Assembly (NCBI GenBank): GCA_002269645.1
Contig: NIVC01000808.1
Coordinates: forward strand, 372,001-436,000
Direction: 5' to 3'
Length of the DNA stretch: 64,000 bases
Source: Macrostomum lignano
Lineage: Eukaryota
This document shows, in pieces, positions 7,419-57,195 of the stretch. A model generated the notes under the pieces. That model was not told where the DNA came from and did not search any database. It saw only the letters and a list, made by a program, of their open reading frames with translations. Position 1 is the first letter of the stretch. Each line of letters starts with the position of its first letter. Position numbers and translations under genes: made by a program.

Positions 7419-7438
7419 ATGGCGAAATTATCGATACG
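7419..7438 (+). CDS. OAZ: Candidate first coding exon of antizyme ORF1 (MAKLSIR, phase 2)
   Basis: ATG GCG AAA TTA TCG ATA CG|GTGAGC; the phase-2 donor joins the phase-2 acceptor at 12970 (CG+G = Arg) to give an open 26-aa ORF1. A putative 37-nt GTAAGT..TTTTCAG intron lies just upstream (7291-7327). Confidence 0.5.
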
Positions 7439-7860
7439 GTGAGCAGTGATAATTGTCTATTCTTTGATGGCCTATTATATATGTTATATTAATTCGAAGT
7501 TACGATTAGGCCTATCTATACGAAAACTAAGTTGTATCTGCTGCAAAGAAGTCAATTATGAAAGATTATAGCTTTTCCCATTGTATAGCTGTATAGATTA
7601 TATAGTATAGATTATAGTAGATTATACTATATAGTTTATAAGCTTATATAGCTTTTAAGCAACCATTATAACTATCTTTTCACAAATGACCTTGTATTGT
7701 CACTGTACTGTAGGCTAGTCTAGTCTGTAGATATGTAAACCTGCTTATAATATATTCCAATCTAAGACTAAGTAATGCAGGCAGAAGTGGCAACAAATAT
7801 TGAAGTTTGCATATTCTATTCAAAATGATATTATGAAGTTTGTGTAAATCAATGTAGGCC

Positions 7861-8454
7861 ATATTGTGGATTGTGTTATATGTACACCAAAAAGTATCTA
7901 GCTATATAGTAAATTGTACGCCAATAAAGTATGCAAATTAAGGGTTCTAGTAAATTGTACGCCAATAAAAATGCATGATTAACAAGCACAAAAACTATGG
8001 AAGAAGCATGCCAAGGCGCGCATCAAAAAATTACCATAAAAAAGTAAAATTGAAAACGTACATCATTTAAAAAACAAAAATAATTAGTAAAACAAAGTTT
8101 TTACGTTTACTACTAGTTAAGGTACATTTTTTAAAAAGAACTTTAATATATTGTTTGAATATTAAATTTATTGTCATAACTTAGCGAAGTAACTTTATTG
8201 ACTATTTAGCGTAATTTACGTAATGGTGTCATACATCAATGCTTTTGTATGCTGCGCTGAAAGCTTGAACAAGTATAGTTAAGAATTGTAAGCAGATGAT
8301 TATGCTTGGAGGTTGTATTTCCTCCGGTTATGATAGATGTACGCCAGCCAAAGAATTTGTACGCCAGATATAAGCCACTTAAAGCGTATGTACACCAGCT
8401 AAAGCATTTGTACGCTGGAATTTTCCGGCGTATACTACACCTTCCGCAATATAG
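7861..8454. mobile_element. Putative non-autonomous DNA transposon (MULE-like MITE)
   Basis: Imperfect terminal inverted repeats ATATTGYGGA..., flanked by direct repeat AATGTAGGCC (7851-7860, 8455-8464); internal TGTACGCCA sub-repeats. Confidence 0.4.
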
Positions 8455-11400
8455 AATGTAGGCCTATATATTTATCACCTAAAGGCTAAATTAAAAATAT
8501 GCCTAGCTTTTTTCAATATTCTGTACCTTGATGAAAAAGAATATGCTAATTTTTTTTAAATTAGCATATTCTAAATTAAATTTTAAATTATGCTGCCATG
8601 TTGCAGAGCAAAACAAAAATATAAGCTATACTATCTTGCATTGCATAGCAGCATGCAATTTGCTATGCACACTAAGTGCATAGCTACATGTTGATGAAAA
8701 TGGCTATGTGCCACTCTGTAGATAGCACAGATTTTTTTTGAAAGCCTTTGTGCATGGGAATTTTCCTCAAAAAGGGCCTCCACAAGACTGGCATGGATGT
8801 AGGCAAATTTTGCAACAATTAATTTTGATAGCAAATTTAATGTAAACAAATTTAAGTGTTTAGTTCTGAAATTTTTTATGTAATTTCTATATTCTTAGAA
8901 CTTTATTACTGTCTTATGAATATTATGAATTTGATAAAAATGTTTATAGCATATTTGTGGAACTGTAAATTTTTGTAAATTTTGCAGAACTTAAAAGAGC
9001 TATAAAAGTGTTTGCCTGATATATTGCATATTTTGCTCATATTATAGTACAAAGATGCATGTATGGTTTACACAATCGCAATTATTGCTATTCAGTGTAC
9101 ATTACCATACATCAAGTGATAATATATGTAGAAGCAATTGAGAGCAAAAGAAAATGTCATGTATAGAAAAGAGTTAAATATCTATTCTTCATATAGTCCT
9201 TGCCTTATCCTATTATTTAGTACCTTACCATACCACATTATAGGTATGCTTCTATCCAATAGCAAGGAATAACTGGATTTTATAGAAAAAAGTATTTGAA
9301 TTCAGTGGCAATGAGGAATTTATGTAGTGGCTAAAATATATGAAGTTATGTTACATATATTAGTACATTTTTTGTTTTGCATGAGTTGTAAATCAAAAGT
9401 GAAAAAGTAAGTGTTAGTCATACTAAATAAGGTTTTTCTAAATTTCAATTTAGAAAAATTTTAATTTTGGAAAGTACCAAATTTCAATTTTGATAGAAAA
9501 TGCACTTTTGGAATGCACTTTTGGAATCTTTACAAGTTAAAGCAAATTATATGTAAAGTTTTTTTAGAATGCTTATTAGCAAAGCAAATGCTTAGCAAAA
9601 GAAGTATGAAAGAAATGAAGTAATCTCTATGTAACTAAACCTCTTTATACTAAAGCTCATGACCTTTGATAGAAAAAATGCATTCAATCAAAATAAATTT
9701 TTATGCTGACCTTCAAGAAAGAACACATTTCTTAGATAGCCATTTGGATCAAGTACATGATAAATAATCAATAGAACAAACTCAATTAAAAGCCTAAAAT
9801 AAAAATTTAATAATAAATCTAAATATACTAAATCTCTTAAGGTTTGTATGTTTGTCCATAATGCTTTACAGATTGCAATTCTTGGCTGATTTTGATCACA
9901 TTTTTGCCAAAAGATGCAAAATCCTCTGGAAAGAAGATGGTTAAAATTTCTTGTATCTGCTTCAATGCTAAAAGGATTAAATATTTGAAAAAAAACTGTT
10001 TAAAATGGGCTTTTTCAATGCAAATTTTATTAGGGAGAAACTTTGCAGCCAATTTCAATGATTGTGCCAGAGCCAACTGATAAGAAAACTCATTGGGCCC
10101 TACTTGAAGGGCTCAATGAAAGCAATAAAATTATTCTGGATGCTGGCAGCTAGCTCTAATTAGCTAGTATATTTACTAATATCATTATATTAAAAGAATT
10201 GATAATATTATGCACAGGTCTTCCTTTATTGTCACTGAGTTTGACTAGATTGATATTGAATTAACCTTTGGCAAAATTATCTATAGTGAATCTCTATTGC
10301 TAAATTTTTTAGAGCAAAAAAATAATAATAAAGAGCTTACTAAAATTGGTTAGCACCCATATATATAGCCTCCAAAATTATAATATTAGCATCTGTGCAA
10401 CTTAGTTTTATAGCTTATCTGATGTTTTTTGTAACTTAGTTTGTTCCTTTTACTATGTATATTATTTTTATTCTCCTTTAGTTTCTTATTTTGTTTTGCT
10501 TTTTCTATTTTATTTTCTTAATGCCATTATTTCTATCTTTTTTATTTTTTATTTTTTTAGTACTGCAAAGCTTTTGCCAATCATTAAGCAGCATATCCTT
10601 AGAATAGTAGGCAATTTATAGCCAAATATTAAATAGGGATCTGACAAAGTAAAATTTTTGAGATTTTCAAGATTCAATATTGTTTGACAATGCAATACAA
10701 TTGAGACTTCAAGATTTTAGACTTTATTATTTTGCAACTTGTATAAACCCAATAGTTCAAAGGACCAAGGACAAAGTACCCTAGAGAAAAAACTATTTTG
10801 GTATATGCCAATTTATACCAAATATGAATTAAATATTTTGCTTCATTTTTTCCACTTTGCATTATCAATTTTGAAATTTTACTGCTAGACTATAGTAATT
10901 CAGATATTTAATTTAAATAATTCAAAGCTAAAAAATAAAAATAACAGTTGTATTTATACAACATTTTATATTTGAAAATAAAAATAAACTTTGTACATTT
11001 CTGTTAAATAGCAAAACCTTTAACTTGTTAAAAAAAGTATAGAAGTTTTTAGAATACACCCATTTTTCCAAAGTATGGCTAAATCCCTTAATATTAGTGA
11101 CACTAAAATGGATTGGATTTTTGGCACTAGTTTGAATCAGTTTGAAGTCAATGTGTTTATATTGGTGTCTAGTATGGTAGATATATATACTATATTCAAT
11201 ATATTGGTATCTACCCTAGGGCTTTTAGTTTACTTTTTTATATCTTAGATTCTTGGCACTTTTTAAATCAAGATTTGATCAAGAAAAAGGTCTAAATCTC
11301 AAATAATGCTAAGATTGAAATCTTGTATGACCTCTACTATTAAACAATGCTAATTTTAACTCTACCTTGCACTTTGTCAACCTTATTGATCTAACAGTGC

Positions 11401-11489
11401 ATACAAATATTATTGAATAGCAATCAGCATCCCCCATCAGGGAGCCAATAAAAATGTAAAAAATTTTTTTTTTCAATAAACTACATATA

Positions 11490-12430
11490 GCTTCTGACCT
11501 CAGCTTTGACATCTTAGCAATCCCCCCAAGCCTTGCCATCTCAGCAATCCCCCCAAGCCTTGCCATCTCAGCAATTCCCACAAAGCCTTGACATCTCAGC
11601 AATCCCCCCAAGCCTTGCCATCTCAGCAATCCCCCCCCCAAGCCTTGTCATCTCAGCAATCCCCCCAAGCCTTGCCATCTCAGCAATTCCCACAAAGCCT
11701 TGACATCTCAGCAATCCCCCCAAGCCTTGCCATCTCAGCAATCCCCCTAAGCCTTGCCATCTCAGCAATCCCCCCAAGCCTTGCCATCTCAGCAATCCCC
11801 CCAAGCCTTGCCATCTCAGCAATCCCCCCAAGCCTTGCCATCTCAGCAATCCCCCCAAGCCTTGACATCTCAGCAATCCCCCAAGCCTTGCCATCTCAGC
11901 AATCCCCCCAAGCCTTGACATCTCAGCAATCCCCCCAAGCCTTGACATCTCAGCAATCCCCCCAAGCCTTGACATCTCAGCAATCCCCCCAAGCCTTGAC
12001 ATCTCAGCAATCCCCCAAGCCTTGACATCTCAGCAATCCCCCCAAGCCTTGACATCTCAGCAATCCCCCAAGCCTTGACATCTCAGCAATCCCCCCAAGC
12101 CTTGCCATCTCAGCAATCCCCCCAAGCCTTGACATCTCAGCAATCCCCCCCAAGCCTTGCCATCTCAGCAATCCCCCCAAGCCTTGCCATCTCAGCAATT
12201 CTCACAAAGCCTTGACATCTCAGCAATCCCCCCAAGCCTTGCCATCTCAGCAATTCCCACAAAGCCTTGACATCTCAGCAATCCCCCCAAGCCTTGACAT
12301 CTCAGCAATCCCCCCAAGCCTTGACATCTCAGCAATCCCCCCAAGCCTTGCCATCTCAGCAATTCTCACAAAGCCTTGACATCTCAGCAATCCCCCCAAG
12401 CCTTGACATCTCAGCAATCCCCCACCCAAG
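11490..12430. repeat. 26-27-bp minisatellite in putative antizyme intron 1
   Basis: Unit CATCTCAGCAATCCCCCCAAGCCTTGA/C, about 35 copies. Confidence 0.95.
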
Positions 12431-12710
12431 CCTAGGCATCTTAGCAAATTCCCCAATGAGTCCTTTATGTTCGACATTATGCTTCATTCATTTTGAAATG
12501 ACGCTTCTAAAATAAAAAAACCAAAAGATAGTGTCAAATATGATTGCCAATATCGAATTTTGTAATGCAGGCATATTTGATAATTATCCATCCACAATAC
12601 TAAAAATGATTTTCTTAAGTGCATCCACAAAATTGAAATGTTTTTAAATTTAAAGTACATTAGGTACTGCCTTTGTAAGGACTTTCTCAAACGCCATAGA
12701 TAAGACTATT

Positions 12711-12882
12711 CATACATGCGCAACCTTGGGAATCACTCGGCCGTTTCTATTGGCAACACACACATGTAAGTCGCTATTGGCTGAGAGCAGTCACGTGACT
12801 ACTATTCTGTCCAATAGCGACTTACATGTGTGTGTTGCCAGTGGAGGCGGCCGGGTGAATCCCTAAGTTGCGCCCAAGCATG
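12711..12882. mobile_element. Palindromic hAT-type MITE, 172 bp
   Basis: Nearly the whole element is an inverted repeat (TGGCAACACACACATGTAAGTCGCTATTGG / CCAATAGCGACTTACATGTGTGTGTTGCCA); 8-bp TSD AGACTATT at 12703-12710 and 12883-12890. Confidence 0.85.
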
Positions 12883-12969
12883 AGACTATTAGTAGACTGT
12901 ATATAATCCAATGCACTCATTATCTAATAAGTTATAACAAAAAGTGCATCTCAAATATTCAACCCGCAG

Positions 12970-14456
12970 GAATAGTGAACTGAGCGATTTTTGCTCCCGT
13001 CCGCCTGCCGGGCCTTCGCAGGGTTTTTGATGCTCCCCGGGCCGCCACAGTCAGCGCACAGTTGACAGAGGGCAGCGGCCTGGGGGCACTCGACAAGCCC
13101 CCTGTCACCCATGTTAGCCAAGAGTCGTCTGCTTATGCCGGCCGTCAATCTGGATTTGCGGTCGGGGTGGGCGGTCAGCCACTCGCTTACACGTTGCTAC
13201 CCGGTGCTGGCCAGCGCCAGACAATGGCGCTGTTCGTCACCGAGGGCGACCAGCTGGGCGAGCGGCTGAAGCAGCAGCTGACGGACATGCTGGAGTTTGC
13301 TGAAGAGGAGCTCCAGTGCGACCGTGTGCTGCTGGGTGTAAGTCGGCGAAGGCAGGATAAAGGTAAGTCAGTCAGCATCTATTATATGCAGCTTCGGTTT
13401 TCACATTTCAAATTTAACTTCAAACAGCTCTCAGACACCATAAAATCGAATAACTACTCGTACGAAGCTAGAAAATTAGCGGGATTCAGAGCTTCCAAGC
13501 TATCACAGAGATTGGCATGTGTCATATTTGAATTACAGGGATTAGCAGATATATCAATCTATAAGCCACAAAGATTAGCAGATTACCTAATGTCTAAGCT
13601 ACAAGGATTAGGAAATTACCTAATCTCTAAGCCACAAAGATTAGCAGATTACCTAATGTCTAAGCTACAAGGATTAGGAAATTACCTAATCTCTAAGCTA
13701 CAAGGATTAGGAAATTACCTAATCTCTAAGCCACAAAGATTAGCAGATTACCTAATGTCTAAGCTACAAGGATTAGGAAATTACCTAATCTCTAAGCTAC
13801 AAGGATTAGGAAATTACCTAATCTCTAAGCTACAAGGATTAGAAGATTACTTAATCTCTAAGCTACAAGGATTAGCAGATTGCCTAATCTCTAAGCTACA
13901 AGGATTACAAGATTACTTAATCTCTAAGCTACAAGGATTAACAGATTACCTGATCTCTAAGCTACAGGGATTAGCAGATTACCTGATCTCTAAGCTACAG
14001 GGATTAGCAGATTACCTGATCTCTAAGCTACAAGGATTAGCAGATTGCCTAATCTCTAAGCTACAAGGATTAGGAAATTACCTAATCTCTAAGCTACAAG
14101 GATTAGAAGGTTACTTAATCTCTAAGCTACAGGGATTAGCAGATTACCTAATTACCTAAGCTACAAAGATTAGCAGATTATTTAATCTCTAAGCTACAGG
14201 GATTAGCAGATTACCTGATCTCTAAGCTACAGGGATTAGCAGATTACCTGATCTCTAAGCTACAAGGTCAGGTCCGAGCAGATCGGATTAAGCCTCTAAC
14301 AGTAGTTGAGCACCAGAGCTATATAACCGGAATTGCAGACGCTCTGCTCAAGACGCTTCTTTTCCTCGGCTTCGCCGGCTACAACCCCGGCCGGAGGAGC
14401 GGCAGGGCATCGAGGCAGGCGACTTCGCTTACATGGTTTATCAGATTGCGGACTGA
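12970..14456 (+). CDS. OAZ: Ornithine decarboxylase antizyme; +1 programmed frameshift at TTT-TGA (13025-13030); exons 12970-13362 and 14339-14456
   Basis: ORF1 ends ...RPPAGPSQGF-stop; the +1 frame reads DAPRAA... into ALFVTEGDQLGERLKQQLTDMLEFAEEELQCDRVLLGVSRRRQDK|DALLKTLLFLGF and DFAYMVYQIAD*, matching the antizyme motifs LLEFAEE, LLRTFSFLGF and CFMAY. Donor AAAG|GTAAGT at 13363, acceptor TTGCAG|AC. A one-base frame break occurs in the last exon. Confidence 0.93.
13031..13107 (+). promoter_or_regulatory. RNA pseudoknot 3' of the antizyme frameshift site
   Basis: Stem 1: 13031-13045 with 13075-13088 (14 bp, one U bulge, one G-U). Stem 2: 13063-13073 with 13097-13107 (10 of 11 pairs). Confidence 0.8.
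13540..14267. repeat. 33-bp minisatellite in antizyme intron 2
   Basis: Unit TCTCTAAGCTACAAGGATTAGCAGATTACCTAA, about 21 copies. Confidence 0.95.
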
Positions 14457-15597
14457 GTGACCAGTTGTGTTTTAAAATCAATTATTGCTTGGGCATTGTT
14501 TTCAATTCTGTTTGCTCTCTGTCTGCCTGGCTCCAGTCAGCTCCCAGCTCTCTAGGGGCGCTCAGTTTGGCAGGGCGCACGCAGAATTGAGAACAAAGCA
14601 AAAGCAAAGTTGTTCAGTGAGGGCAGGTCGTGTTGTTCGTCTTTTTTCTTTAATAAACTCTGTCTCGCATCAATAATCAATATTTTCCCTCCTATTATTC
14701 AAATCAGTTAATTTTTAACTTGCTTCAGCCTGACTCCCAGCACCAGTTTATTTTTAACACATTACTAGTTAGTAACTCCTGTTAGATTTGCACCTGAAAA
14801 GAGTGTAAATGCGTATCTAATTCCATAAACTCTGTCCCCAAATGTTTATCCAGCTCTACTCGCTTCGATTCTGTTTGATCAATTGAAAATAAATACTCGA
14901 ACAAAAAAGCTCGCATATTGTGTGTCTGACTGGTTAATTTTTAAGCTATCGTATTCTTTTCATTCTTATTCCTTCGCCGTTGCAATCTATATCTATCTCT
15001 ATCTTATTTTTCTTTGGTTCAGTTCAGTTTTACCTGGCGCGCTGTGTTGCAAACATATTTCCAACTTTGGACTGTGGTTAAGATTGGAAAATTACCGGAG
15101 ATTTCCTTGAAAAAAGTCTAGAGAGAGAGATAGAGAGGGGCCAGCTGGAGGGCAAAGTTCTAAGCAGTCGAGTTAGCACGTGACAGCACAGCAGCGCCTG
15201 GCTGTCTCAAGACCTGCTGCAATAGAACAGCTCTCTAACTTTCTCTCTGTGTGTAGCAGCTTAGCCTTAGTGTTTACAGTCGGATATATTTGCTTTGCAA
15301 GCGCTTTTTGCTGATAAAATACTACTAAACGCCCCCAAAAAGTTAAAACTGTTTACTATTATTCTTAATAATAATAATAATAATCATTATCCGAATCATT
15401 GTGTGACTGACTAAAAACACTTAAAATATGCTTTTTTAAGTTTTGTCCTTGATTATTTTCTCTGGAAAGGTATGCTTAGTAGGCAATCTTAACTGTATGG
15501 TAATTAATCTGGATTTGAAATCTAGAAGTTTAGAAGTTTAGACGTAGCAAGTTGTTCATTAAAGGAGCAAACTAGTTTTTTTATTAATTAATACTCG

Positions 15598-17589: not shown

Positions 17590-20500
17590 TCAGCCGGTGT
17601 CACCGCCGCCGCCAGCCCGGTAGCTGTGCAGCATCCGGCGGTTCACCGGCCACACATCGGGGTTCCACTGCTTGGCCTCAAGCTCCTCGGCAGTTGGCAC
17701 GTAGGGCGTGTGCAGCCGCACCGCGCTGCCAGCCACGCTCAGCAGCTTCACCTCCAGCGGTCCGACATTCATCAGCTCTCCTAGCGAGCGCCCGTCATCG
17801 CCCAGCTCGCGTAGCAGCTGGCGGAGCTCCTCGTCGCCTGCCTCGATGTCGTCCTCAGCGTCGCTGTCAGCTGCGTCGTCGTCCCTGTCGCCGACGCCGG
17901 AGCCCCGCTCCGAGGCGGACTGCAGACGGGTGGTCAGCGCCAGGAACCGGTCCTCCAGAGCCTTCTCCGAGGCGCTTCGAGGCTGGCGCGAGGCGCCGTC
18001 CTCTGAATCGCCGGTGCCGCCGATGGCGCCTTTGGAGGCCAGGACCTACGGGAGAGGAAAAATGTGAGGGAGAGATGTACTGAGGTGCTGAGCTCGAACT
18101 AGATCCTGCAACGTTACACACTCTGAGACACACCCTGAGATTCCCATAGACACACCCTGAGATTACCATAGACACACCCTGAGATTCCCATAGACACACC
18201 CTGAGATTACCTTTGACACACCCTGAGATTACCTTTGACACACCCTGAGATTCCCATAGACGCATCCGCAGGATCCTCATAGACAAATCCCCAGGATCCT
18301 CATAGAAACATCCCCAGGATCCTCATGAAACATCCCCAGGATTCTCATGAAACATCCCCAGGATCTTCATGAAACATCCCCAGGATCTTCATGAAACATC
18401 CCCAGGATCTTCATGAAACATCCCCAGGATCCTCATGAAACATCCCCAGGATCCTCATGAAACATCCCCAGGATCCTCATGAAACATCCCCAGGATCCTC
18501 ATGAAACATCACCAGGATCCTCATGAAACATCCCCAGGATCCTCATGAAACATCCCCAGGATCCTCATGAAACATCCCAAGGATCCTCATGAAACATCCC
18601 TAGGATCCTCATGAAACATCCCCAGGATCCTCATGAAACATCCCCAGGATCCTCAAAAAACACCCCCAGGATCCCCATGAAACATCCCCAGGATCCTCAT
18701 AGACACATTGTCAGATTTCCCATCAAATAATCCCACAGAGCTTTGCCCACCTGGTCCAGGTCGAGCTCCAGCAGGCCCGGCTCAGCCAGGCTGTCCCCAT
18801 CCCGGAACTGCGTGAGGAAGAAGTCCCTGGAGAAGCGCAGGTCCTGGACCCGGCACTCAAACAGGTCGGCCATGATTCGCAGATTGCGACGCTCCAGGTC
18901 CTCCACCTGGGCCAGCACCCGTTCCATCTCGGCCCGGTGGGTCTCAGCCTCTTCCTTCAACCAGCTGTTGTCCACAAGCTCCTGGGTGATGCCGACGGGC
19001 GGGGGTCAGCGAGTGCGGTGGAGTTCAGCGGATCGCATCAGTGACAGTTCCGAGTATTTTTAAATTCACTGCAGCTCTAGCCCGTGTAGCTTTACACTTA
19101 GCAGATAAGTGGATTGCTAATCTAGCCAACAAGGATTATTAAGGAATAGAATGGATGGCTAATCTAGCCAGCATGGATTATGAAAGGATAGAATGGATTG
19201 CTAATCTAGCCAACATGGATTATTAAGGAATAGAATGGATTGCTAATCTAGCCAACATGGATTATTAAGGAATAATAGAATGGATTGCTAATCTAGCCAA
19301 CATGGATTATTAAGGAATAGAATGGATTGCTAATCTAGCCAACAAGGATTATTAAGGAATAGAATGGATTGCTAATCTAGCCAACAAGGATTATTAAGGA
19401 ATAGAATGGATTGCTAATCTAGCCAACAAGGATTATTAAGGAATAGAATGGATTGCTAATCTAGCTAACATGGATTATTAAGGAATAGAATGGATTGCTA
19501 ATCTAGCCAACAAGGATTATTAAGGAATAGAATGGATTGCTAATCTAGCCAACATGGATTATTAAGGAATAGAATGGATTGCTAATCAAGCCAACATGGA
19601 TTATTAAGGAATAGAATGGATTGCTAATCTAGCCAACATGGATTATCAAGGAATAGAATGGATGGCTAATCTAGCCAACATGGATTATTAAGGAATAATA
19701 GAATGGATTGATAATCTAGCCAGCATGGATTATGAAAGGATAGAATGGATTGCTAATCTAGCCAACATGGATTATTAAGGAATAGAATGGATGGCTAATC
19801 TAGCCAACATGGATTATTAAGGAATAGAATGGATTGCTAATCTAGCCAACAAGGATTATTAAGGAATAGAATGGATTGCTAATCTAGCTAACATGGATTA
19901 TGAAAGGATAGAATGGATTGCTAATCTAGCCAACAAGGATTATTAAGGAATAGAATGGATTGCTAATCTAGCCAACATGGATTATTAAGGAATAGAATGG
20001 ATTGCTAATCTAGCCAACAAGGATTATTAAGGAATAGAATGGATTGCTAATCTAGCCAACATGGATTATTAAGGAATAGAATGGATTGCTAATCAAGCCA
20101 ACATGGATTATTAAGGAATAGAATGGATTGCTAATCTAGCCAACATGGATTATCAAGGAATAGAATGGATGGCTAATCTAGCCAACATGGATTATTAAGG
20201 AATAATAGAATGGATTGATAATCTAGCCAGCATGGATTATGAAAGGATAGAATGGATTGCTAATCTAGCCAACATGGATTATTAAGGAATAGAATGGATG
20301 GCTAATCTAGCCAACATGGATTATTAAGGAATAGAATGGATTGCTAATCTAGCCAACAAGGATTATTAAGGAATAGAATGGATTGCTAATCTAGCTAACA
20401 TGGATTATGAAAGGATAGAATGGATTGCTAATCTAGCCAACAAGGATTATTAAGGAATAGAATGGATTGCTAATCTAGCCAACAAGGATTATTAAGGAAT

Positions 20501-23500
20501 AGAATGGATTGCTAATCTAGCCAACAAGGATTATTAAGGAATAGAATGGATTGCTAATCTAGCCAACAAGGATTATTAAGGAATAGAATGGATTGCTAAT
20601 CCAGCCAACAAGGATTATTAAGGAATAGAATGGATTGCTAATCTAGCCAACATGGATTATTAAGGAATAGAATGGATTGCTAATCTAGCCAACATGGATT
20701 ATTAAGGAATAGAATGGATTGCTAATCTAGCCAACAAGGATTATTAAGGAATAGAATGGATGGCTAATCTAGCCAGCATGGATTATGAAAGGATAGAATG
20801 GATTGCTAATCTAGCCAACATGGATTATTAAGGAATAGAATGGATTGCTAATCTAGCCAACATGGATTATTAAGGAATAATAGAATGGATTGCTAATCTA
20901 GCCAGCATGGATTATGAAAGGATAGAATGGATTGCTAATCTAGCCAACAAGGATTATTAAGGAATAGAATGGATTGCTAATCTAGCTAACATGGATTATG
21001 AAAGGATAGAATGGATTGCTAATCTAGCCAACAAGGATTATTAAGGAATAGAATGGATTGCTAATCTAGCCAACATGGATTATTAAGGAATAGAATGGAT
21101 TGCTAATCTAGCCAACAAGGATTATTAAGGAATAGAATGGATTGCTAATCTAGCCAACAAGGATTATTAAGGACTAGAATGGATTGCTAATCTAGCCAAC
21201 AAGGATTATTAAGGAATAGAATGGATTGCTAATCTAGCCAACAAGGATTATTAAGGAATAGAATGGATTGCTAATCTAGCCAACATGGATTATTAAGGAA
21301 TAGAATGGATTGCTAATCTAGCCAACATGGATTATTAAGGAATAGAATGGATTGCTAATCTAGCTAACATGGATTATTAAGGAATAGAATGGATTGCTAA
21401 TCTAGCCAACATGGATTATTAAGGAATAGAATGGATTGCTAATCTAGCCAACATGAATTATTAAGGAATAGAATGGATTGCTAATCTAGCCAACATGGAT
21501 TATTAAGGAATAGAATGGATTGCTAATCTAGCCAACATGGATTATTAAGGAATAGAATGGATTGCTAATCTAGCCAACATGGATTATTAAGGAATAGAAT
21601 GGATTGCTAATCTGACCTGCTTAGTATTCTTGTCCAGCTGCTGCACCGCAGTATCCGTGGCCCGACTCTTCTGTTCCTCCAGCGCCGTGTCAGTGGTGGT
21701 CTGGATGCGGTCCCGGTCCTGCCGTGTCTTCCTGTCCAAGTACTCGCACATGGACTTGAACGTCTCGTCGATGTCGCGCACCTCCTGGCGCAGCAGCCGG
21801 ATGCTGGTCTGCTGCTCCAGCTGGCCGCGGTCGCGGAACTCTCGCCAGGTTTCAATCTCGGACCTGGTGGCCGCCGTGTCCGCTATGGTCTGCTCGATCT
21901 CCTGGCGGAGGCTGCGGATCTCCTCCCGCTCCTGGGAAAGCCGGGCGAAGCTGATTGAGCCGGTTGTCTGGCTAATTGAGCCTGGTTGTCTGGCTAATTG
22001 AGCCGGTTGTCTGGCTAATTGAGTCTGTTAATCTGGCTAATTGAGCCTGGTTGTCTGGCTAATTGAGCCTGTTAATCTGGCTAATTGAGCCTGGTTGTCT
22101 GGCTAATTGAGCCTGTTAATCTGGCTAATTGAGCCTGGTTGTCTGGCTAATTGAGCCTGGTTGTCTGGCTAATTGAGTCTGTTAATCTGGCTAATTATGT
22201 GTGATAATCTGTTTAATGATGTGTGATAATCTGGCTAATGATGTGTGATAATCTGTTTAATGATGTGTTATAATCTGGCTAATGATGTGTGATAATCTGA
22301 CCAATGATGTGTGATAATCTGGCTAATGATGTATGATAATCTGGCTAATGATGTGTGATAATCTGGCTAATGATGTATGATAATCTGGCTAATTATGTGT
22401 GATAATCTGGCTAATGATGTATGATAATCTGGCTAATTATGTGTGATAATCTGGCTAATGATGTGTGATAATCTGGCTAATTATGTGTGATAATCTGGCT
22501 AATGATGTGTGATAATCTGGCTAATTATGTGTGATAATCTGGCTAATGATGTATGATAATCTGGCTAATGATGTATGATAATCTGGCTAATTATGTGTGA
22601 TAATCTGGCTAATTATGTATGATAATCTGGCTAATTATGTGTGATAATCTGGCTAATGATGTATGATAATCTGGCTAATTATGTGTGATAATCTGGCTAA
22701 TGATGTGTGATAATCTGGCTAATGATGTATGATAATCTGGCTAATTATGTGTGATAATCTGGCTAATGATGTGTGATAATCTGGCTAATGATGTGTGATA
22801 ATCTGGCTAATTATGTGTGATAATCTGGCTAATGATGTGTGATAATCTGGCTAATGATGTGTGATAATCTGGCTAATGATGTGTGATAATCTGGCTAATG
22901 ATGTATGATAATCTGGCTAATTATGTGTGATAATCTGGCTAATGATGTGTGATAATCTGGCTAATGATGTGTGATAATCTGGCTAATGATGTATGATAAT
23001 CTGGCTAATGATGTATGATAATCTGGCTAATGATGTGTGATAATCTGGCTAATGATGTGTGATAATCTGGCTAATTATGTGTGATAATCTGGCTAATGAT
23101 GTGTGATAATCTGGCTAATTATGTGTGATAATCTGGCTAATTATGTGTGATAATCTGGCTAATTATGTGTGATAATCTGGCTAATGATGTGTGATAATCT
23201 GGCTAATTATGTGTGATAATCTGGCTAATTATGTGTGATAATCTGGCTAATGATGTGTGATAATCTGGCTAATGATGTATGATAATCTGGCTAATGATGT
23301 GTGATAATCTGGCTAATGATGTATGATAATCTGGCTAATTATGTGTGATAATCTGGCTAATGATGTGTGATAATCTGGCTAATGATGTGTGATAATCTGG
23401 CTAATGATGTGTGATAATCTGGTTAATGATGTATGATAATCTGGCTAATGATGTGTGATAATCTGGCTAATGAGGTGTGATATTCTGGCTAATTATGTGT

Positions 23501-24281
23501 GATAATCTGGCTAATTATGTGTGATATTCTGGCTAACAATCTGGCCACTGATCACCTGCTGGTCCAGTCGCCAGTTCTCTTGCATAGCTGCCACCACCTC
23601 GGGCCGGTCAGTAAAGTGCTCCGAGTCCTTTTTCTCCTGCTCTTGCAGCCGCTTCAGCAGCATATTCATGTACGCCTCGCGCTCCTCAGCCAGCCGCTTG
23701 TTCCGTTCTTGGTTCCGCTCCTTCATCTCCAGCTGGCCTTTCACCTGTGCGTTTTGTATTCGGGATTGATTACTGTTAATTTGAGTACGCTGTCACTAGA
23801 TTAGTGGCTATACTAGTCACTGTCACTAGATTAGTGGCTAGTCACTGTCACTAGGTTAGTGTCTAGTCACTGTCACTAGATTAGTGGCTAGTCACTGTCA
23901 CTAGATTAGTGGCTAGTCACTATCACTAGATTAGTGTCTAGTCACTGTCACTAGGTTAGTGTCTAGTCACTGTCACTAGGTTAGTGTCTAGTCACTGTCA
24001 CTAGGTTAGTGTCTAGTCACTGTCACTAGGTTAGTGTCTAGTCACTGTCACTAGGTTAGTGTCTAGTCACTGTGACTAGATTAGTGCTCTGCACCAAGTG
24101 GAGTTGCCGGAGACAAGCCAGGTCTCACCTGAAACGCGATCTCCTCCAGCTCCCGCTCCTGCAGCTTGATCTTGTAGTCCCAGATGGCCTCAGCTGGCGT
24201 CATGCCGGGTTCCTTGGCCTTCTTGGACTTTTTGCCGCCCTTCTTTCCCTTCTTGCCGCCGCCTTTTTTGCCTTTAGGCAT
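17590..24281 (-). CDS. CCDC83: Coiled-coil domain-containing protein 83, ~447 aa; exons 24281-24129, 23744-23556, 21931-21617, 18981-18751, 18045-17590
   Basis: All junctions GT-AG, phase 0. EAIWDYKIKLQERELEEIAFQVK, QENWRLDQQ, VDNSWLKEEAETHRAE and NVGPLEVKLLSV are collinear with the vertebrate CCDC83 segments EALLDYQCQIKE, WENDWLKKEIAIHRKE and NLGPLGVKLMSV (recalled, not searched). Confidence 0.85.
18125..18700. repeat. Two adjacent 22-bp minisatellites in CCDC83 intron 4
   Basis: GACACACCCTGAGATTCCCATA followed by CATCCCCAGGATCCTCATGAAA. Confidence 0.93.
19130..21612. repeat. 39-bp minisatellite (~63 copies) filling CCDC83 intron 3
   Basis: Unit GGATTGCTAATCTAGCCAACATGGATTATTAAGGAATAGAAT-type; contains a 507-bp higher-order duplication. 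Confidence 0.97.
21950..23540. repeat. Two adjacent 22-bp minisatellites in CCDC83 intron 2
   Basis: CTGGCTAATTGAGCCTGGTTGT (21950-22190) followed by CTGGCTAATGATGTGTGATAAT (22190-23540). Confidence 0.95.
23800..24085. repeat. 25-bp minisatellite in CCDC83 intron 1
   Basis: Unit AGTCACTGTCACTAGGTTAGTGTCT. Confidence 0.95.

Positions 24282-34433: not shown

Positions 34434-57195
<22,762 letters not shown>

What the first reader, a model, noticed from the sequence alone, without database searches (positions are those of the whole stretch)
12970..13031. Programmed +1 ribosomal frameshift site UUU-UGA-U of antizyme
Seen: ORF1 stops at TTT TGA (13025-13030); GAT at 13029 is exactly in frame with the antizyme domain, and tRNA-Phe can re-pair perfectly on UUU at 13026-13028. 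Known: antizymes need a polyamine-stimulated +1 shift at the ORF1 stop; UUU-UGA is a described invertebrate variant of vertebrate UCC-UGA. Gene predictors will mis-annotate this locus as starting at 13062.
Basis: partly seen in the sequence, partly recalled or inferred. Interest (0 to 1): 0.7.

Follow-up and report, generated by a model that had tools for sequence, protein, structure and literature searches.

The report
Flatworm antizyme +1 frameshift site
This is the real, and already published, programmed +1 ribosomal frameshift site (UUU-UGA-U) of the ornithine decarboxylase antizyme gene of the flatworm Macrostomum lignano; it is an ordinary example of a well-known mechanism, and the public gene models get it wrong.

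Summary
The window is Macrostomum lignano genomic DNA (100% match to GenBank PAA76620.1 on NIVC01000808.1).

- **Sequence:** at 13025-13031 it reads TTT TGA T. A 26-codon ORF1 (ATG at 7419, spliced 7438/12970) ends at that TGA. The +1 frame starting at GAT 13029 carries the Pfam ODC_AZ domain and has no ATG upstream of the domain.
- **Conservation:** the cassette is base-for-base identical in two other M. lignano loci. It is also kept in RNA-seq contigs of two related species, one with UUU-UGA-U and one with AUU-UGA-U. This excludes an assembly error or a splice that bypasses the stop.
- **Downstream RNA:** a 73-nt H-type pseudoknot can form. Stem 1 has 11 bp, with one pair seen as G-C, A-U and G-U across species. 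Stem 2 has 10 bp and a one-nucleotide hinge. Synonymous sites there are unusually invariant (19/22 against 19/53, p about 9e-5).
- **Prior knowledge:** Ivanov & Atkins 2007 (PMC1874602) already list M. lignano antizyme as a UUU-UGA case.

Small additions from this work:
- GenBank models omit ORF1 and the shift.
- This copy lacks one C in a C-run of the last exon, which puts its C-terminus out of frame.
- A relative uses AUU-UGA.

Verdict: confirmed, already known, low interest.

The parts
7419..7438 (+). Coding part of exon 1: ATG GCG AAA TTA TCG ATA CG, followed by the donor gtgagc. It starts ORF1 (MAKLSI + 2 nt). Kozak context is A at -3 and G at +4.
   Evidence: This is the only candidate of 155 ATG...GT mini-exons that encodes MAKLSIR, identical to the ORF1 start in the related mRNA L001. 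It is conserved in paralogous loci L006 and L007.
7439..12969 (+). Intron 1 (5.5 kb, GT...AG). It contains a 27-bp minisatellite (11502-12447) and a 172-bp MITE (12711-12882).
12970..13362 (+). Exon 2. It holds the rest of ORF1, the shift site, the 3' stimulator and the first 111 codons of ORF2. It ends AAAG|gtaagt.
   Evidence: (blastn to mRNA contig L001 spans 12968-13362 without an intron).
13025..13031 (+). Shift site UUU UGA U. UUU sits in the P site and UGA is the ORF1 stop. After the +1 shift the A-site codon is GAU (13029-13031).
   Evidence: Literature.
13034..13038 (+). Pyrimidine tract UCCCC starting 3 nt after the stop. It is a near match to the UCCCU consensus of metazoan antizymes.
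   Evidence: The consensus is described in PMC1874602. The tract is invariant in three species.
13035..13045 (+). Pseudoknot stem 1, 5' arm: CCCCGGGCCGC.
   Evidence: Pairs with 13075-13085 (11 bp). Recovered by the MFE fold and by RNAalifold. The pair 13041/13079 is G-C, A-U and G-U in the three species.
13063..13073 (+). Pseudoknot stem 2, 5' arm: UGACAGAGGGC. It lies inside the stem-1 loop. A13074 is the one-nucleotide hinge.
   Evidence: duplexfold with 13097-13107 gives -16.7 kcal/mol, 10 bp with one A.C mismatch. All positions are invariant. This arm is inferred, not shown.
13075..13085 (+). Pseudoknot stem 1, 3' arm: GCGGCCUGGGG.
13097..13107 (+). Pseudoknot stem 2, 3' arm: GCCCCCUGUCA.
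   Evidence: It lies in a 19-nt block that is invariant in three species, including its synonymous sites.
14339..14460 (+). Coding part of exon 3 (acceptor ttgcag). It encodes DALLKTLLFLGFAGYNP, then goes out of frame in this copy. The stop is at 14458-60 in the frame as it stands. The conserved frame would stop at 14454-56.
14385..14388 (+). C4 run where loci L006 and L007 have C5. This 1-nt deletion replaces the conserved C-terminus ...RPEERQGIEAGDFAYMVYQIAD with GRRSGRASRQATSLTWFIRLRTE.
14652..14657 (+). AATAAA, the likely polyadenylation signal about 200 nt after the stop.
   Evidence: Inferred only.

Best explanation
This is the recoding site of the ornithine decarboxylase antizyme gene of Macrostomum lignano (locus Mlig004369g3).

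**Proposed mechanism**
1. Ribosomes start at AUG 7419 and translate the 26-codon ORF1 (MAKLSIRNSELSDFCSRPPAGPSQGF) across the exon 1/exon 2 junction.
2. They arrive with UUU (Phe) in the P site and UGA in the A site.
3. Termination there is slow because of the UGA-U context.
4. A fraction of ribosomes move +1. Either peptidyl-tRNA-Phe re-pairs on UUU 13026-13028, or the U of UGA is skipped.
5. These ribosomes read GAU and continue in ORF2. The product is a roughly 176-residue antizyme whose ODC_AZ domain binds ODC monomers and sends them to the proteasome.
6. By analogy with all studied antizymes, polyamines raise the shift efficiency, which closes a negative feedback loop.
7. The shift is probably helped by a pseudoknot that starts 4 nt after the stop (stem 1 13035-45/13075-85; stem 2 13063-73/13097-107) and by conserved sequence 5' of the site.

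**Shown here:** the two-ORF anatomy, the domain, the gene model, conservation of the cassette, and stem 1.

**Inferred:** stem 2, polyamine dependence, the exact slip mechanism, and ODC targeting.
For: - **Sequence and frames:**. In the spliced mRNA the ORF2 frame has a stop 16 codons upstream of the site. It has no ATG until codon 66 of ORF2.
- **Domain:** ODC_AZ scores 33.5 bits for exon 2 alone and 49.6-55.1 bits for the shifted products of three species. Solved antizyme structures 1zo0, 4zgy, 4zgz and 5bwa match at E about 5e-7.
- **Species identity:** (100% to BOX15_Mlig004369g3; NIVC01000808.1).
- **Conservation:** three M. lignano loci are identical over 111 nt around the site, including the T5 run. 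mRNA contigs assembled independently from three sequencing runs of one relative carry ATG...UUU UGA U. A third species carries AUU UGA U with the same ORF1 length.
- **RNA constraint:** 19 of 22 synonymous-capable codons are invariant in ORF2 codons 1-29, against 19 of 53 elsewhere (Fisher p = 9e-5). All 21 modelled pairs form in all three species, against at most 51% when partners are slid. One pair occurs as G-C, A-U and G-U. Stem 1 is recovered by MFE (z = -2.4) and by RNAalifold.
- **Literature:** PMC1874602 lists M. lignano as UUU-UGA, describes class II pseudoknots in Platyhelminthes, and describes the UCCCU tract and the poor termination context.
Against: - No M. lignano transcript or protein data could be examined directly here. 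mRNA-level support comes from relatives and from the cited paper.
- No Rfam family matched the region. From my own memory, not checked here, Rfam's antizyme frameshifting element models the vertebrate class I pseudoknot.
- With three sequences the covariation is not statistically distinguishable from shuffles (329-338 of 500 shuffles reach it).
- Stem 2 never varies.
- A competing inner hairpin (13050-55/13061-66) overlaps the 5' arm of stem 2 and keeps pairing through two one-sided changes.
- M. lignano lacks the UGG of 5' module A, which both relatives keep.
- This particular copy has an out-of-frame C-terminus, so its product may be defective.
Confidence: 0.95

Rival explanations
1. The extra T is an assembly error in a homopolymer, or the mRNA lacks one U. 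ORF1 and ORF2 would then be a single ordinary reading frame and no frameshift would be needed.
For: The same window does differ from its paralogues by one base in another homopolymer, C4 against C5 at 14385-88. Single-base length differences in runs therefore do occur in this assembly or genome.
Against: - The T5 run is identical in three separately assembled loci.
- Short-read RNA contigs from three runs of a relative have the same GUUUUUGAUG.
- A third species has CAUAUUUGAUG, where the need for a +1 shift does not depend on a long T run.
- The requirement is universal in antizymes and is reported for this species from cDNA-era data.
Confidence: 0.01
2. The functional product is the short protein of the public annotation. 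It would start at the internal ATG 13224 (85-86 aa), and ORF1 would act only as an upstream ORF with no frameshifting.
For: GenBank and UniProt models start there. A Met is present at that position in all three species.
Against: - The 65 ORF2 codons upstream of that Met are conserved at protein and nucleotide level (DAPR.ATV..LLTEGSGLGA...PPVTHV).
- The ODC_AZ match starts about five residues upstream of the Met (residue 87 against Met 92).
- An out-of-frame ATG at 13111 lies between ORF1 and that Met.
- ORF1 length, its stop position and the 3' structure are conserved, which an ordinary uORF does not require.
Confidence: 0.03
3. The cassette is genuine, but this copy (g3) is a decaying duplicate. 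The 1-nt deletion in the last exon removes the conserved C-terminal roughly 22 residues, so the frameshift here yields a crippled antizyme. The working genes would be the paralogues on NIVC01001019.1 and NIVC01003239.1. This is compatible with the main explanation for the site itself.
For: - C4 here against C5 in L006 and L007.
- The frame as it stands loses all similarity to the relatives after GYNP, while the other frame aligns.
- The same 86-aa product sits in a UniRef100 cluster with n=2. My guess, not checked here, is that the two entries come from different assemblies.
Against: - It could equally be a long-read homopolymer error.
- Everything else in the exons shown is identical or nearly identical to the paralogues, so there is no further sign of decay.
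- The Pfam score is not lower for the product as it stands (53.8 against 49.6 bits).
Confidence: 0.3
4. The 3' stimulator is a simple extended stem-loop (stem 1 plus an inner hairpin 13050-55/13061-66) and not a pseudoknot.
For: The nested MFE and RNAalifold structures contain this inner hairpin. Two of its pairs change on one side only and stay paired in the third species. It adds about -8 kcal/mol. PMC1874602 notes that some lineages keep only stem 1.
Against: - The downstream block 13096-13114 is invariant, including synonymous sites, and can form 10 bp with the loop (-16.7 kcal/mol).
- It leaves a one-nucleotide hinge, as described for class I and IIa pseudoknots.
- Class II pseudoknots are reported in Platyhelminthes.
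Confidence: 0.3

Closest known systems
Macrostomum lignano antizyme as catalogued by Ivanov & Atkins 2007 (NAR 35:1842, PMC1874602)
   Same: Same species, same gene family and same UUU-UGA shift site. The paper names M. lignano as the flatworm example of UUU-UGA.
   Different: Nothing essential differs. Added here are the genomic exon-intron model, the three paralogous loci, the state of the public annotation, and the C-run deletion in this copy. The paper's supplementary alignments are not held, so I could not compare base by base.
Planarian and trematode antizymes with an AUU-UGA shift site
   Same: Same phylum and the same +1 shift at a UGA stop. One relative found here (L005) uses AUU-UGA-U with an otherwise near-identical cassette.
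   Different: The window itself has UUU in the P site. This allows perfect re-pairing, whereas AUU allows two of three positions.
Class IIa invertebrate antizyme pseudoknot (oyster Crassostrea gigas prototype; Ivanov et al. 2004, as described in PMC1874602)
   Same: - Stem 1 has 11 bp and starts a few nucleotides after the stop, overlapping the UCCC(U/C) tract.
- The 5' arm of stem 2 lies in the stem-1 loop.
- The hinge is a single nucleotide.
- The total span of 73 nt is longer than the 60-nt vertebrate class I.
   Different: Loop 1 is 17 nt here, while the description says it can exceed 35 nt. Identity of the stem-1 sequence to the class II consensus could not be checked because the figures are not held. 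Stem 2 has no covariation support here.
Mammalian antizyme 1 (OAZ1), UCC-UGA-U with a class I pseudoknot and 5' modules A, B and C
   Same: - A +1 shift at the ORF1 UGA followed by U.
- ORF2 begins Asp-Ala-Pro.
- The ODC_AZ domain is homologous to the solved rat and human antizyme structures.
   Different: - The P-site codon is UUU, not UCC.
- ORF1 has only 26 codons.
- No Rfam family matched the region.
- The UGG of module A (UGG-UGC-UCC-UGA) is replaced by CAG in M. lignano, though two relatives keep it.
Bacterial release factor 2 (prfB) +1 frameshift, CUU-UGA
   Same: Autoregulatory +1 shift at an in-frame UGA, with P-site tRNA re-pairing on a U-rich codon.
   Different: The stimulator (a Shine-Dalgarno-like element), the sensor (RF2 level rather than polyamines) and the domain of life all differ. 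It is an analogy only.

Membership tests
Ornithine decarboxylase antizyme (protein family, Pfam PF02100) | ODC_AZ domain scoring above the curated threshold | tested here: met
   Exon 2 alone scores 33.5 bits. The full shifted product scores 53.8 bits as it stands in the window and 49.6 bits with the conserved C-terminal frame. The cut-off is 24.2 bits. PDB antizymes match at E about 5e-7.
Antizyme +1 programmed frameshift gene architecture | A short ORF1 with the initiator AUG overlaps a long ORF2 in the +1 frame. ORF2 lacks its own start upstream of the domain. | tested here: met
   In the spliced mRNA, ORF1 is 26 codons plus UGA. The ORF2 frame is closed 16 codons upstream of the site and has no ATG before ORF2 codon 66. 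The layout is the same in two other species.
Antizyme +1 programmed frameshift gene architecture | [quoted passage not shown] | tested here: met
   UUU UGA at 13025-13030. The codon list is in Table 1 of PMC1874602.
Antizyme +1 programmed frameshift gene architecture | Poor termination context (U or C after the stop) and the UCCCU tract 3 nt downstream | tested here: met
   UGA-U, then UGC, then UCCCC at 13034-13038. The tract has 4 of 5 identical to the consensus, with a pyrimidine at the fifth position. It is invariant in three species. The feature is described.
Antizyme +1 programmed frameshift gene architecture | 5' module A (UGG-UGC immediately 5' of the P-site codon) | tested here: not met
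   M. lignano has CAG-GGU before UUU-UGA. The two relatives keep UGG in register (UGG-AGU and UGG-CAU). This module is common but not universal, so it does not bar membership.
Class II (invertebrate) antizyme pseudoknot | H-type pseudoknot just 3' of the stop: stem 1 of about 11 bp, stem 2 pairing the stem-1 loop with downstream sequence, and a one-nucleotide hinge | tested here: inconclusive
   Stem 1 is recovered by two predictors, and one pair occurs as G-C, A-U and G-U. Stem 2 is possible (10 bp, -16.7 kcal/mol, hinge A13074) but invariant, and it competes with an inner hairpin. Three sequences give no statistical power.
Rfam RNA families (all 4227 models), including any antizyme frameshifting element | Covariance-model match | tested here: not met
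   No match at gathering score in the window. No antizyme family appeared even at E <= 10 in 12800-13400. From my own memory, not checked here, Rfam's antizyme element is the vertebrate class I pseudoknot, so a miss in an invertebrate would be expected.
Antizyme (function) | Frameshifting stimulated by polyamines; the product binds ODC and targets it for degradation | not testable with these tools
   Inferred from family membership only.

The most novel reading that the evidence does not exclude
The cassette may be turning over unusually fast in this flatworm lineage. The P-site codon switches between UUU and AUU among close relatives. M. lignano has lost the otherwise deeply conserved UGG of 5' module A. 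The 3' pseudoknot may be a compact variant of class II with an alternative inner hairpin. One of three recently duplicated copies carries a real C-terminal frame break, so the recently duplicated genome may express both intact and truncated antizymes.
Probability: 0.2. Interest if true: 0.3.

Novelty: already known. Interest (0 to 1): 0.15.

Why it matters
Antizyme frameshifting is the classic cellular example of regulated recoding, and this instance adds no new principle.

Its practical value is for annotation. All public protein models for the three M. lignano antizyme loci are wrong: 85-86 aa from an internal Met, or a 5'-partial model that reads ORF2 backwards through the site. They should be replaced by a ribosomal-slippage CDS of about 176 aa with three exons.

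The comparison also gives a small, clean data set for anyone studying how +1 shift sites and their stimulators evolve in flatworms. It contains UUU against AUU in the P site, one compensatory pair in stem 1, and loss of the module A UGG.

Tried and rejected
- **Rfam:** the whole window at gathering score and 12800-13400 at E <= 10 gave nothing relevant, only chance snoRNA and miRNA hits below threshold.
- **Exon 1 by blastn:** blastn and blastn-short of the related mRNA 5' end against the window found no exon 1. It was found instead by enumerating ATG...GT mini-exons in the right phase. The 5'-UTR motif GGCGAACCCTAACC shared by the two relatives is absent from the window, so the transcription start is unknown.
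- **Protein searches:** two searches returned only five proteins in total, so no larger comparative set could be built. P0002 has no contig on record.
- **Species of the relatives:** a literature search for the run accessions SRR7428098-100 and SRR22269866 found nothing. The two relatives are therefore unnamed, and I assume they are Macrostomum or close kin.
- **Supplements:** those of PMC1874602 are not held.
- **Bacterial-style ORF:** the 365-aa ORF 13062-14159 is an artefact. It runs from exon 2 into the 33-bp minisatellite of intron 2.
- **Minus strand:** the ORFs over the site (12951-13148, 12959-13108) were considered and dropped. They are short and lie antisense to a conserved coding exon. 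They were not searched against any database.
Full report
**1. What is in the sequence.**

Reading 12400-14200 shows a splice acceptor...caacccgcag|G, with the exon starting at 12970. A run of five T lies at 13024-13028, followed by G, A and T at 13029-13031. In the frame of 12971 the translation is NSELSDFCSRPPAGPSQGF and then a stop. The last sense codon is TTT (13025-27) and the stop is TGA (13028-30). In the +1 frame, GAT at 13029 opens DAPRAATVSAQLTEGSG...LEFAEEELQCDRVLLGVSRRRQDK. That frame ends at a donor, AAAG|gtaagt, at 13362/13363.

The heptamer TTTTGAT itself occurs 19 times in the window against 14.5 expected. The motif alone means nothing. The context carries the weight.

**2. What gene it is.**

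- The +1 frame of exon 2 hits Pfam ODC_AZ (PF02100) at 33.5 bits, against a cut-off of 24.2.
- A protein search finds a 100% match to GenBank PAA76620.1, 'hypothetical protein BOX15_Mlig004369g3 [Macrostomum lignano]', on contig NIVC01000808.1 of assembly GCA_002269645.1. The window is therefore flatworm nuclear DNA.
- tblastn of that protein places the last exon at 14339-14460, behind the acceptor ttgcag.
- The first exon could not be found by nucleotide similarity. I listed all 155 ATG-to-GT mini-exons upstream that have the correct splice phase. Exactly one encodes MAKLSIR: ATG GCG AAA TTA TCG ATA CG|gtgagc at 7419-7438. This is identical to the ORF1 start in a related species (below) and is conserved in the paralogous loci.

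The gene model is exon 1 (ending at 7438), a 5.5-kb intron, exon 2 (12970-13362), a 1-kb intron, and exon 3 (from 14339), with AATAAA at 14652.

Spliced, ORF1 is MAKLSIRNSELSDFCSRPPAGPSQGF plus UGA, 26 codons. In the spliced mRNA the ORF2 frame is closed by a stop 16 codons upstream of the site. It contains no ATG until ORF2 codon 66. The full protein can therefore only be made by a +1 shift.

The shifted product has about 176 residues. It scores 49.6-53.8 bits on ODC_AZ and matches the solved rat and human antizyme 1 chains (1zo0, 4zgy, 4zgz, 5bwa) at E about 5e-7.

**3. Is the extra base real?**

Three lines of evidence argue against both.

- **Paralogues.** The same assembly has two further loci, L006 on NIVC01001019.1 and L007 on NIVC01003239.1. 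Over 111 nt around the site all three are identical, including the T5 run.
- **First relative.** Public sequencing runs SRR7428098, SRR7428099 and SRR7428100 each assembled independently into the same roughly 1.08-kb intron-less contig (L001-L003). It reads ATG GCG AAG CTT TCT ATA AGA AAC AAT GAG ... GGG TGG AGT TTT TGA TGC TCC CCG G. Its ORF1 is MAKLSIRNNELSNFCSRPPAGPGWSF followed by a stop, also 26 codons, and it is followed in the +1 frame by DAPRTATV... and the antizyme domain.
- **Second relative.** The contig L005 from SRR22269866 reads ...GGG TGG CAT ATT TGA TGC TCC CCG GGC. ORF1 is again 26 codons and the stop is at the same place, but the P-site codon is AUU. Here the need for a +1 shift does not rest on a long homopolymer at all.

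I could not name the two species. They are 65-67% identical to M. lignano over the C-terminal 85 residues.

**4. Prior knowledge.**

Ivanov & Atkins (NAR 2007, PMC1874602) surveyed close to 300 antizyme mRNAs. [quoted passage not shown] They also state that AUU-UGA occurs in planarians and trematodes.

The same paper describes three further features:
- a weak termination context, with U or C after the stop;
- a UCCCU tract starting 3 nt after the stop;
- a class II pseudoknot in five invertebrate phyla, including Platyhelminthes.

The exact phenomenon in the exact species is thus already published. A search for 'Macrostomum' plus 'antizyme' finds only that paper and one unrelated paper.

**5. 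Stimulatory elements.**

The stop is followed by U. Three nucleotides later comes UCCCC (13034-38), which is invariant in the three species.

From 13035 the RNA can form an 11-bp helix, CCCCGGGCCGC (13035-45) with GCGGCCUGGGG (13075-85). It appears in the single-sequence MFE (z = -2.4) and in the RNAalifold consensus. The only variable pair, 13041/13079, is G-C in M. lignano, A-U in the first relative and G-U in the second. The 5' change is non-synonymous (Ala to Thr) and the 3' change is synonymous.

Inside the loop, UGACAGAGGGC (13063-73) can pair with GCCCCCUGUCA (13097-107). This gives 10 bp around one A.C mismatch, at -16.7 kcal/mol. It leaves a single hinge nucleotide, A13074, before the 3' arm of stem 1. 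Together these make an H-type pseudoknot of 73 nt, with a 17-nt loop 1 and an 11-nt loop 3. This agrees with the verbal description of class IIa.

The caveats are real:
- Stem 2 never varies.
- Three sequences give no statistical power. Between 329 and 338 of 500 shuffles do as well.
- An inner hairpin, 13050-55 with 13061-66, competes with stem 2. It also stays paired through two one-sided changes.

Independent of any model, the region is under RNA-level constraint. Take the codons whose amino acid is the same in all three species. In ORF2 codons 1-29, 19 of 22 such codons are nucleotide-invariant, against 19 of 53 in the rest of ORF2 (Fisher p = 9e-5). The window boundaries for this test were chosen after seeing the alignment.

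Upstream of the site, a block from about 13 to 46 nt 5' of the stop is also well conserved (AGC.A.UU.UGCUC.CG.CC.CCUGC.GGGCCU). The UGG of module A is deeply conserved (UGG-UGC-UCC-UGA in human and S. pombe). It is present in register in both relatives but is CAG in M. lignano.

**6. Mechanism.**

*Shown:* the anatomy, the domain, and conservation of the cassette.

*From established knowledge of antizymes:* with UUU in the P site and UGA in the A site, slow termination lets a polyamine-dependent fraction of ribosomes shift +1. The A site then reads GAU.

*Inferred:* UUU-U allows perfect re-pairing of tRNA-Phe. The AUU relative shows that perfect re-pairing is not required in this lineage. The choice between re-pairing and occlusion of the first stop nucleotide therefore stays open. 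The product would bind ODC monomers and target them to the proteasome, which lowers polyamine synthesis.

**7. State of the annotation and of this copy.**

- GenBank's model for this locus starts at the internal ATG 13224 and has 86 aa.
- The model for the paralogues (PAA52458.1/PAA73325.1, 159 aa, 'partial') reads the ORF2 frame upstream through the site as RLPGLRRVF-DAPR.
- None of these models includes ORF1 or a slippage.

Separately, this copy has CCCC at 14385-88 where both paralogues have CCCCC. As a result its C-terminus reads GRRSGRASRQATSLTWFIRLRTE. The conserved version is RPEERQGIEAGDFAYMVYQIAD, which the relatives and the rat structure support.

The same 86-aa product is in a UniRef100 cluster of two entries. 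That may hint the variant is real, but I could not check where the two entries come from. A long-read homopolymer error is not excluded.

**8. Verdict.**

The finding is a correct reading of a genuine programmed +1 frameshift site. It belongs to a thoroughly characterised family, and the literature has already listed it for this species. Novelty: already known. Interest: low. The useful output is a corrected gene model and a few comparative details.

Noticed in passing
window 14385-14388 (compare L006 and L007, alignment A5): The last antizyme exon has a C4 run where the two paralogous loci have C5. This copy's C-terminal 22 or so residues are therefore out of frame relative to the conserved ...GDFAYMVYQIAD. 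It is either a real paralogue-specific deletion or a homopolymer assembly error.
   Followed up: partly
window 12711-12882, flanked by AGACTATT at 12703-12710 and 12883-12890: A 172-bp palindromic element sits in intron 1, 88 nt upstream of exon 2. It has 63-nt arms that are 87% complementary, with CACGTG at the centre. It has an 8-bp target-site duplication. It is present here and in L006 but absent from L007, which shows the empty site ...AGACTATTAGTAGAC. It looks like a hAT-type MITE insertion that is polymorphic between gene copies.
   Followed up: partly
window 11502-12447 and 13534-14267: Both antizyme introns carry long minisatellites: a 27-bp unit in about 35 copies and a 33-bp unit in about 22 copies. 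They create long spurious ORFs on both strands. Intron 1 is about 5.5 kb here, against about 7.4 and 6.7 kb in L006 and L007.
   Followed up: partly
whole window, e.g. 19110-21613, 22010-23536, 35983-37617, 40347-41028, 44636-45689, 54147-55200, 55926-57009: The window is unusually dense in tandem arrays: 30 TRF rows (about 25 distinct arrays) with score at least 400 and periods of 4-182 bp. They include a 2.5-kb array of a 42-bp unit and 1.6 kb of (GATA)n.
   Followed up: no
L005 positions 42-125 (SRR22269866 contig): A related species uses AUU-UGA-U instead of UUU-UGA-U, with an otherwise near-identical cassette. The P-site codon therefore changes among close relatives and links M. lignano to the AUU-UGA type reported for planarians and trematodes.
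   Followed up: partly
window 13019-13021 (CAG), against UGG in L001 and L005: M. lignano has lost the UGG that lies 6 nt upstream of the stop in both relatives. That UGG is part of the deeply conserved 5' module A of antizyme mRNAs.
   Followed up: no
window about 17590-24281, minus strand (L004 14367-21058): The next annotated gene is a 447-aa protein on the minus strand with no Pfam hit. The same neighbour follows the antizyme gene in L006 and L007, so the duplicated segments extend beyond the antizyme gene.
   Followed up: no
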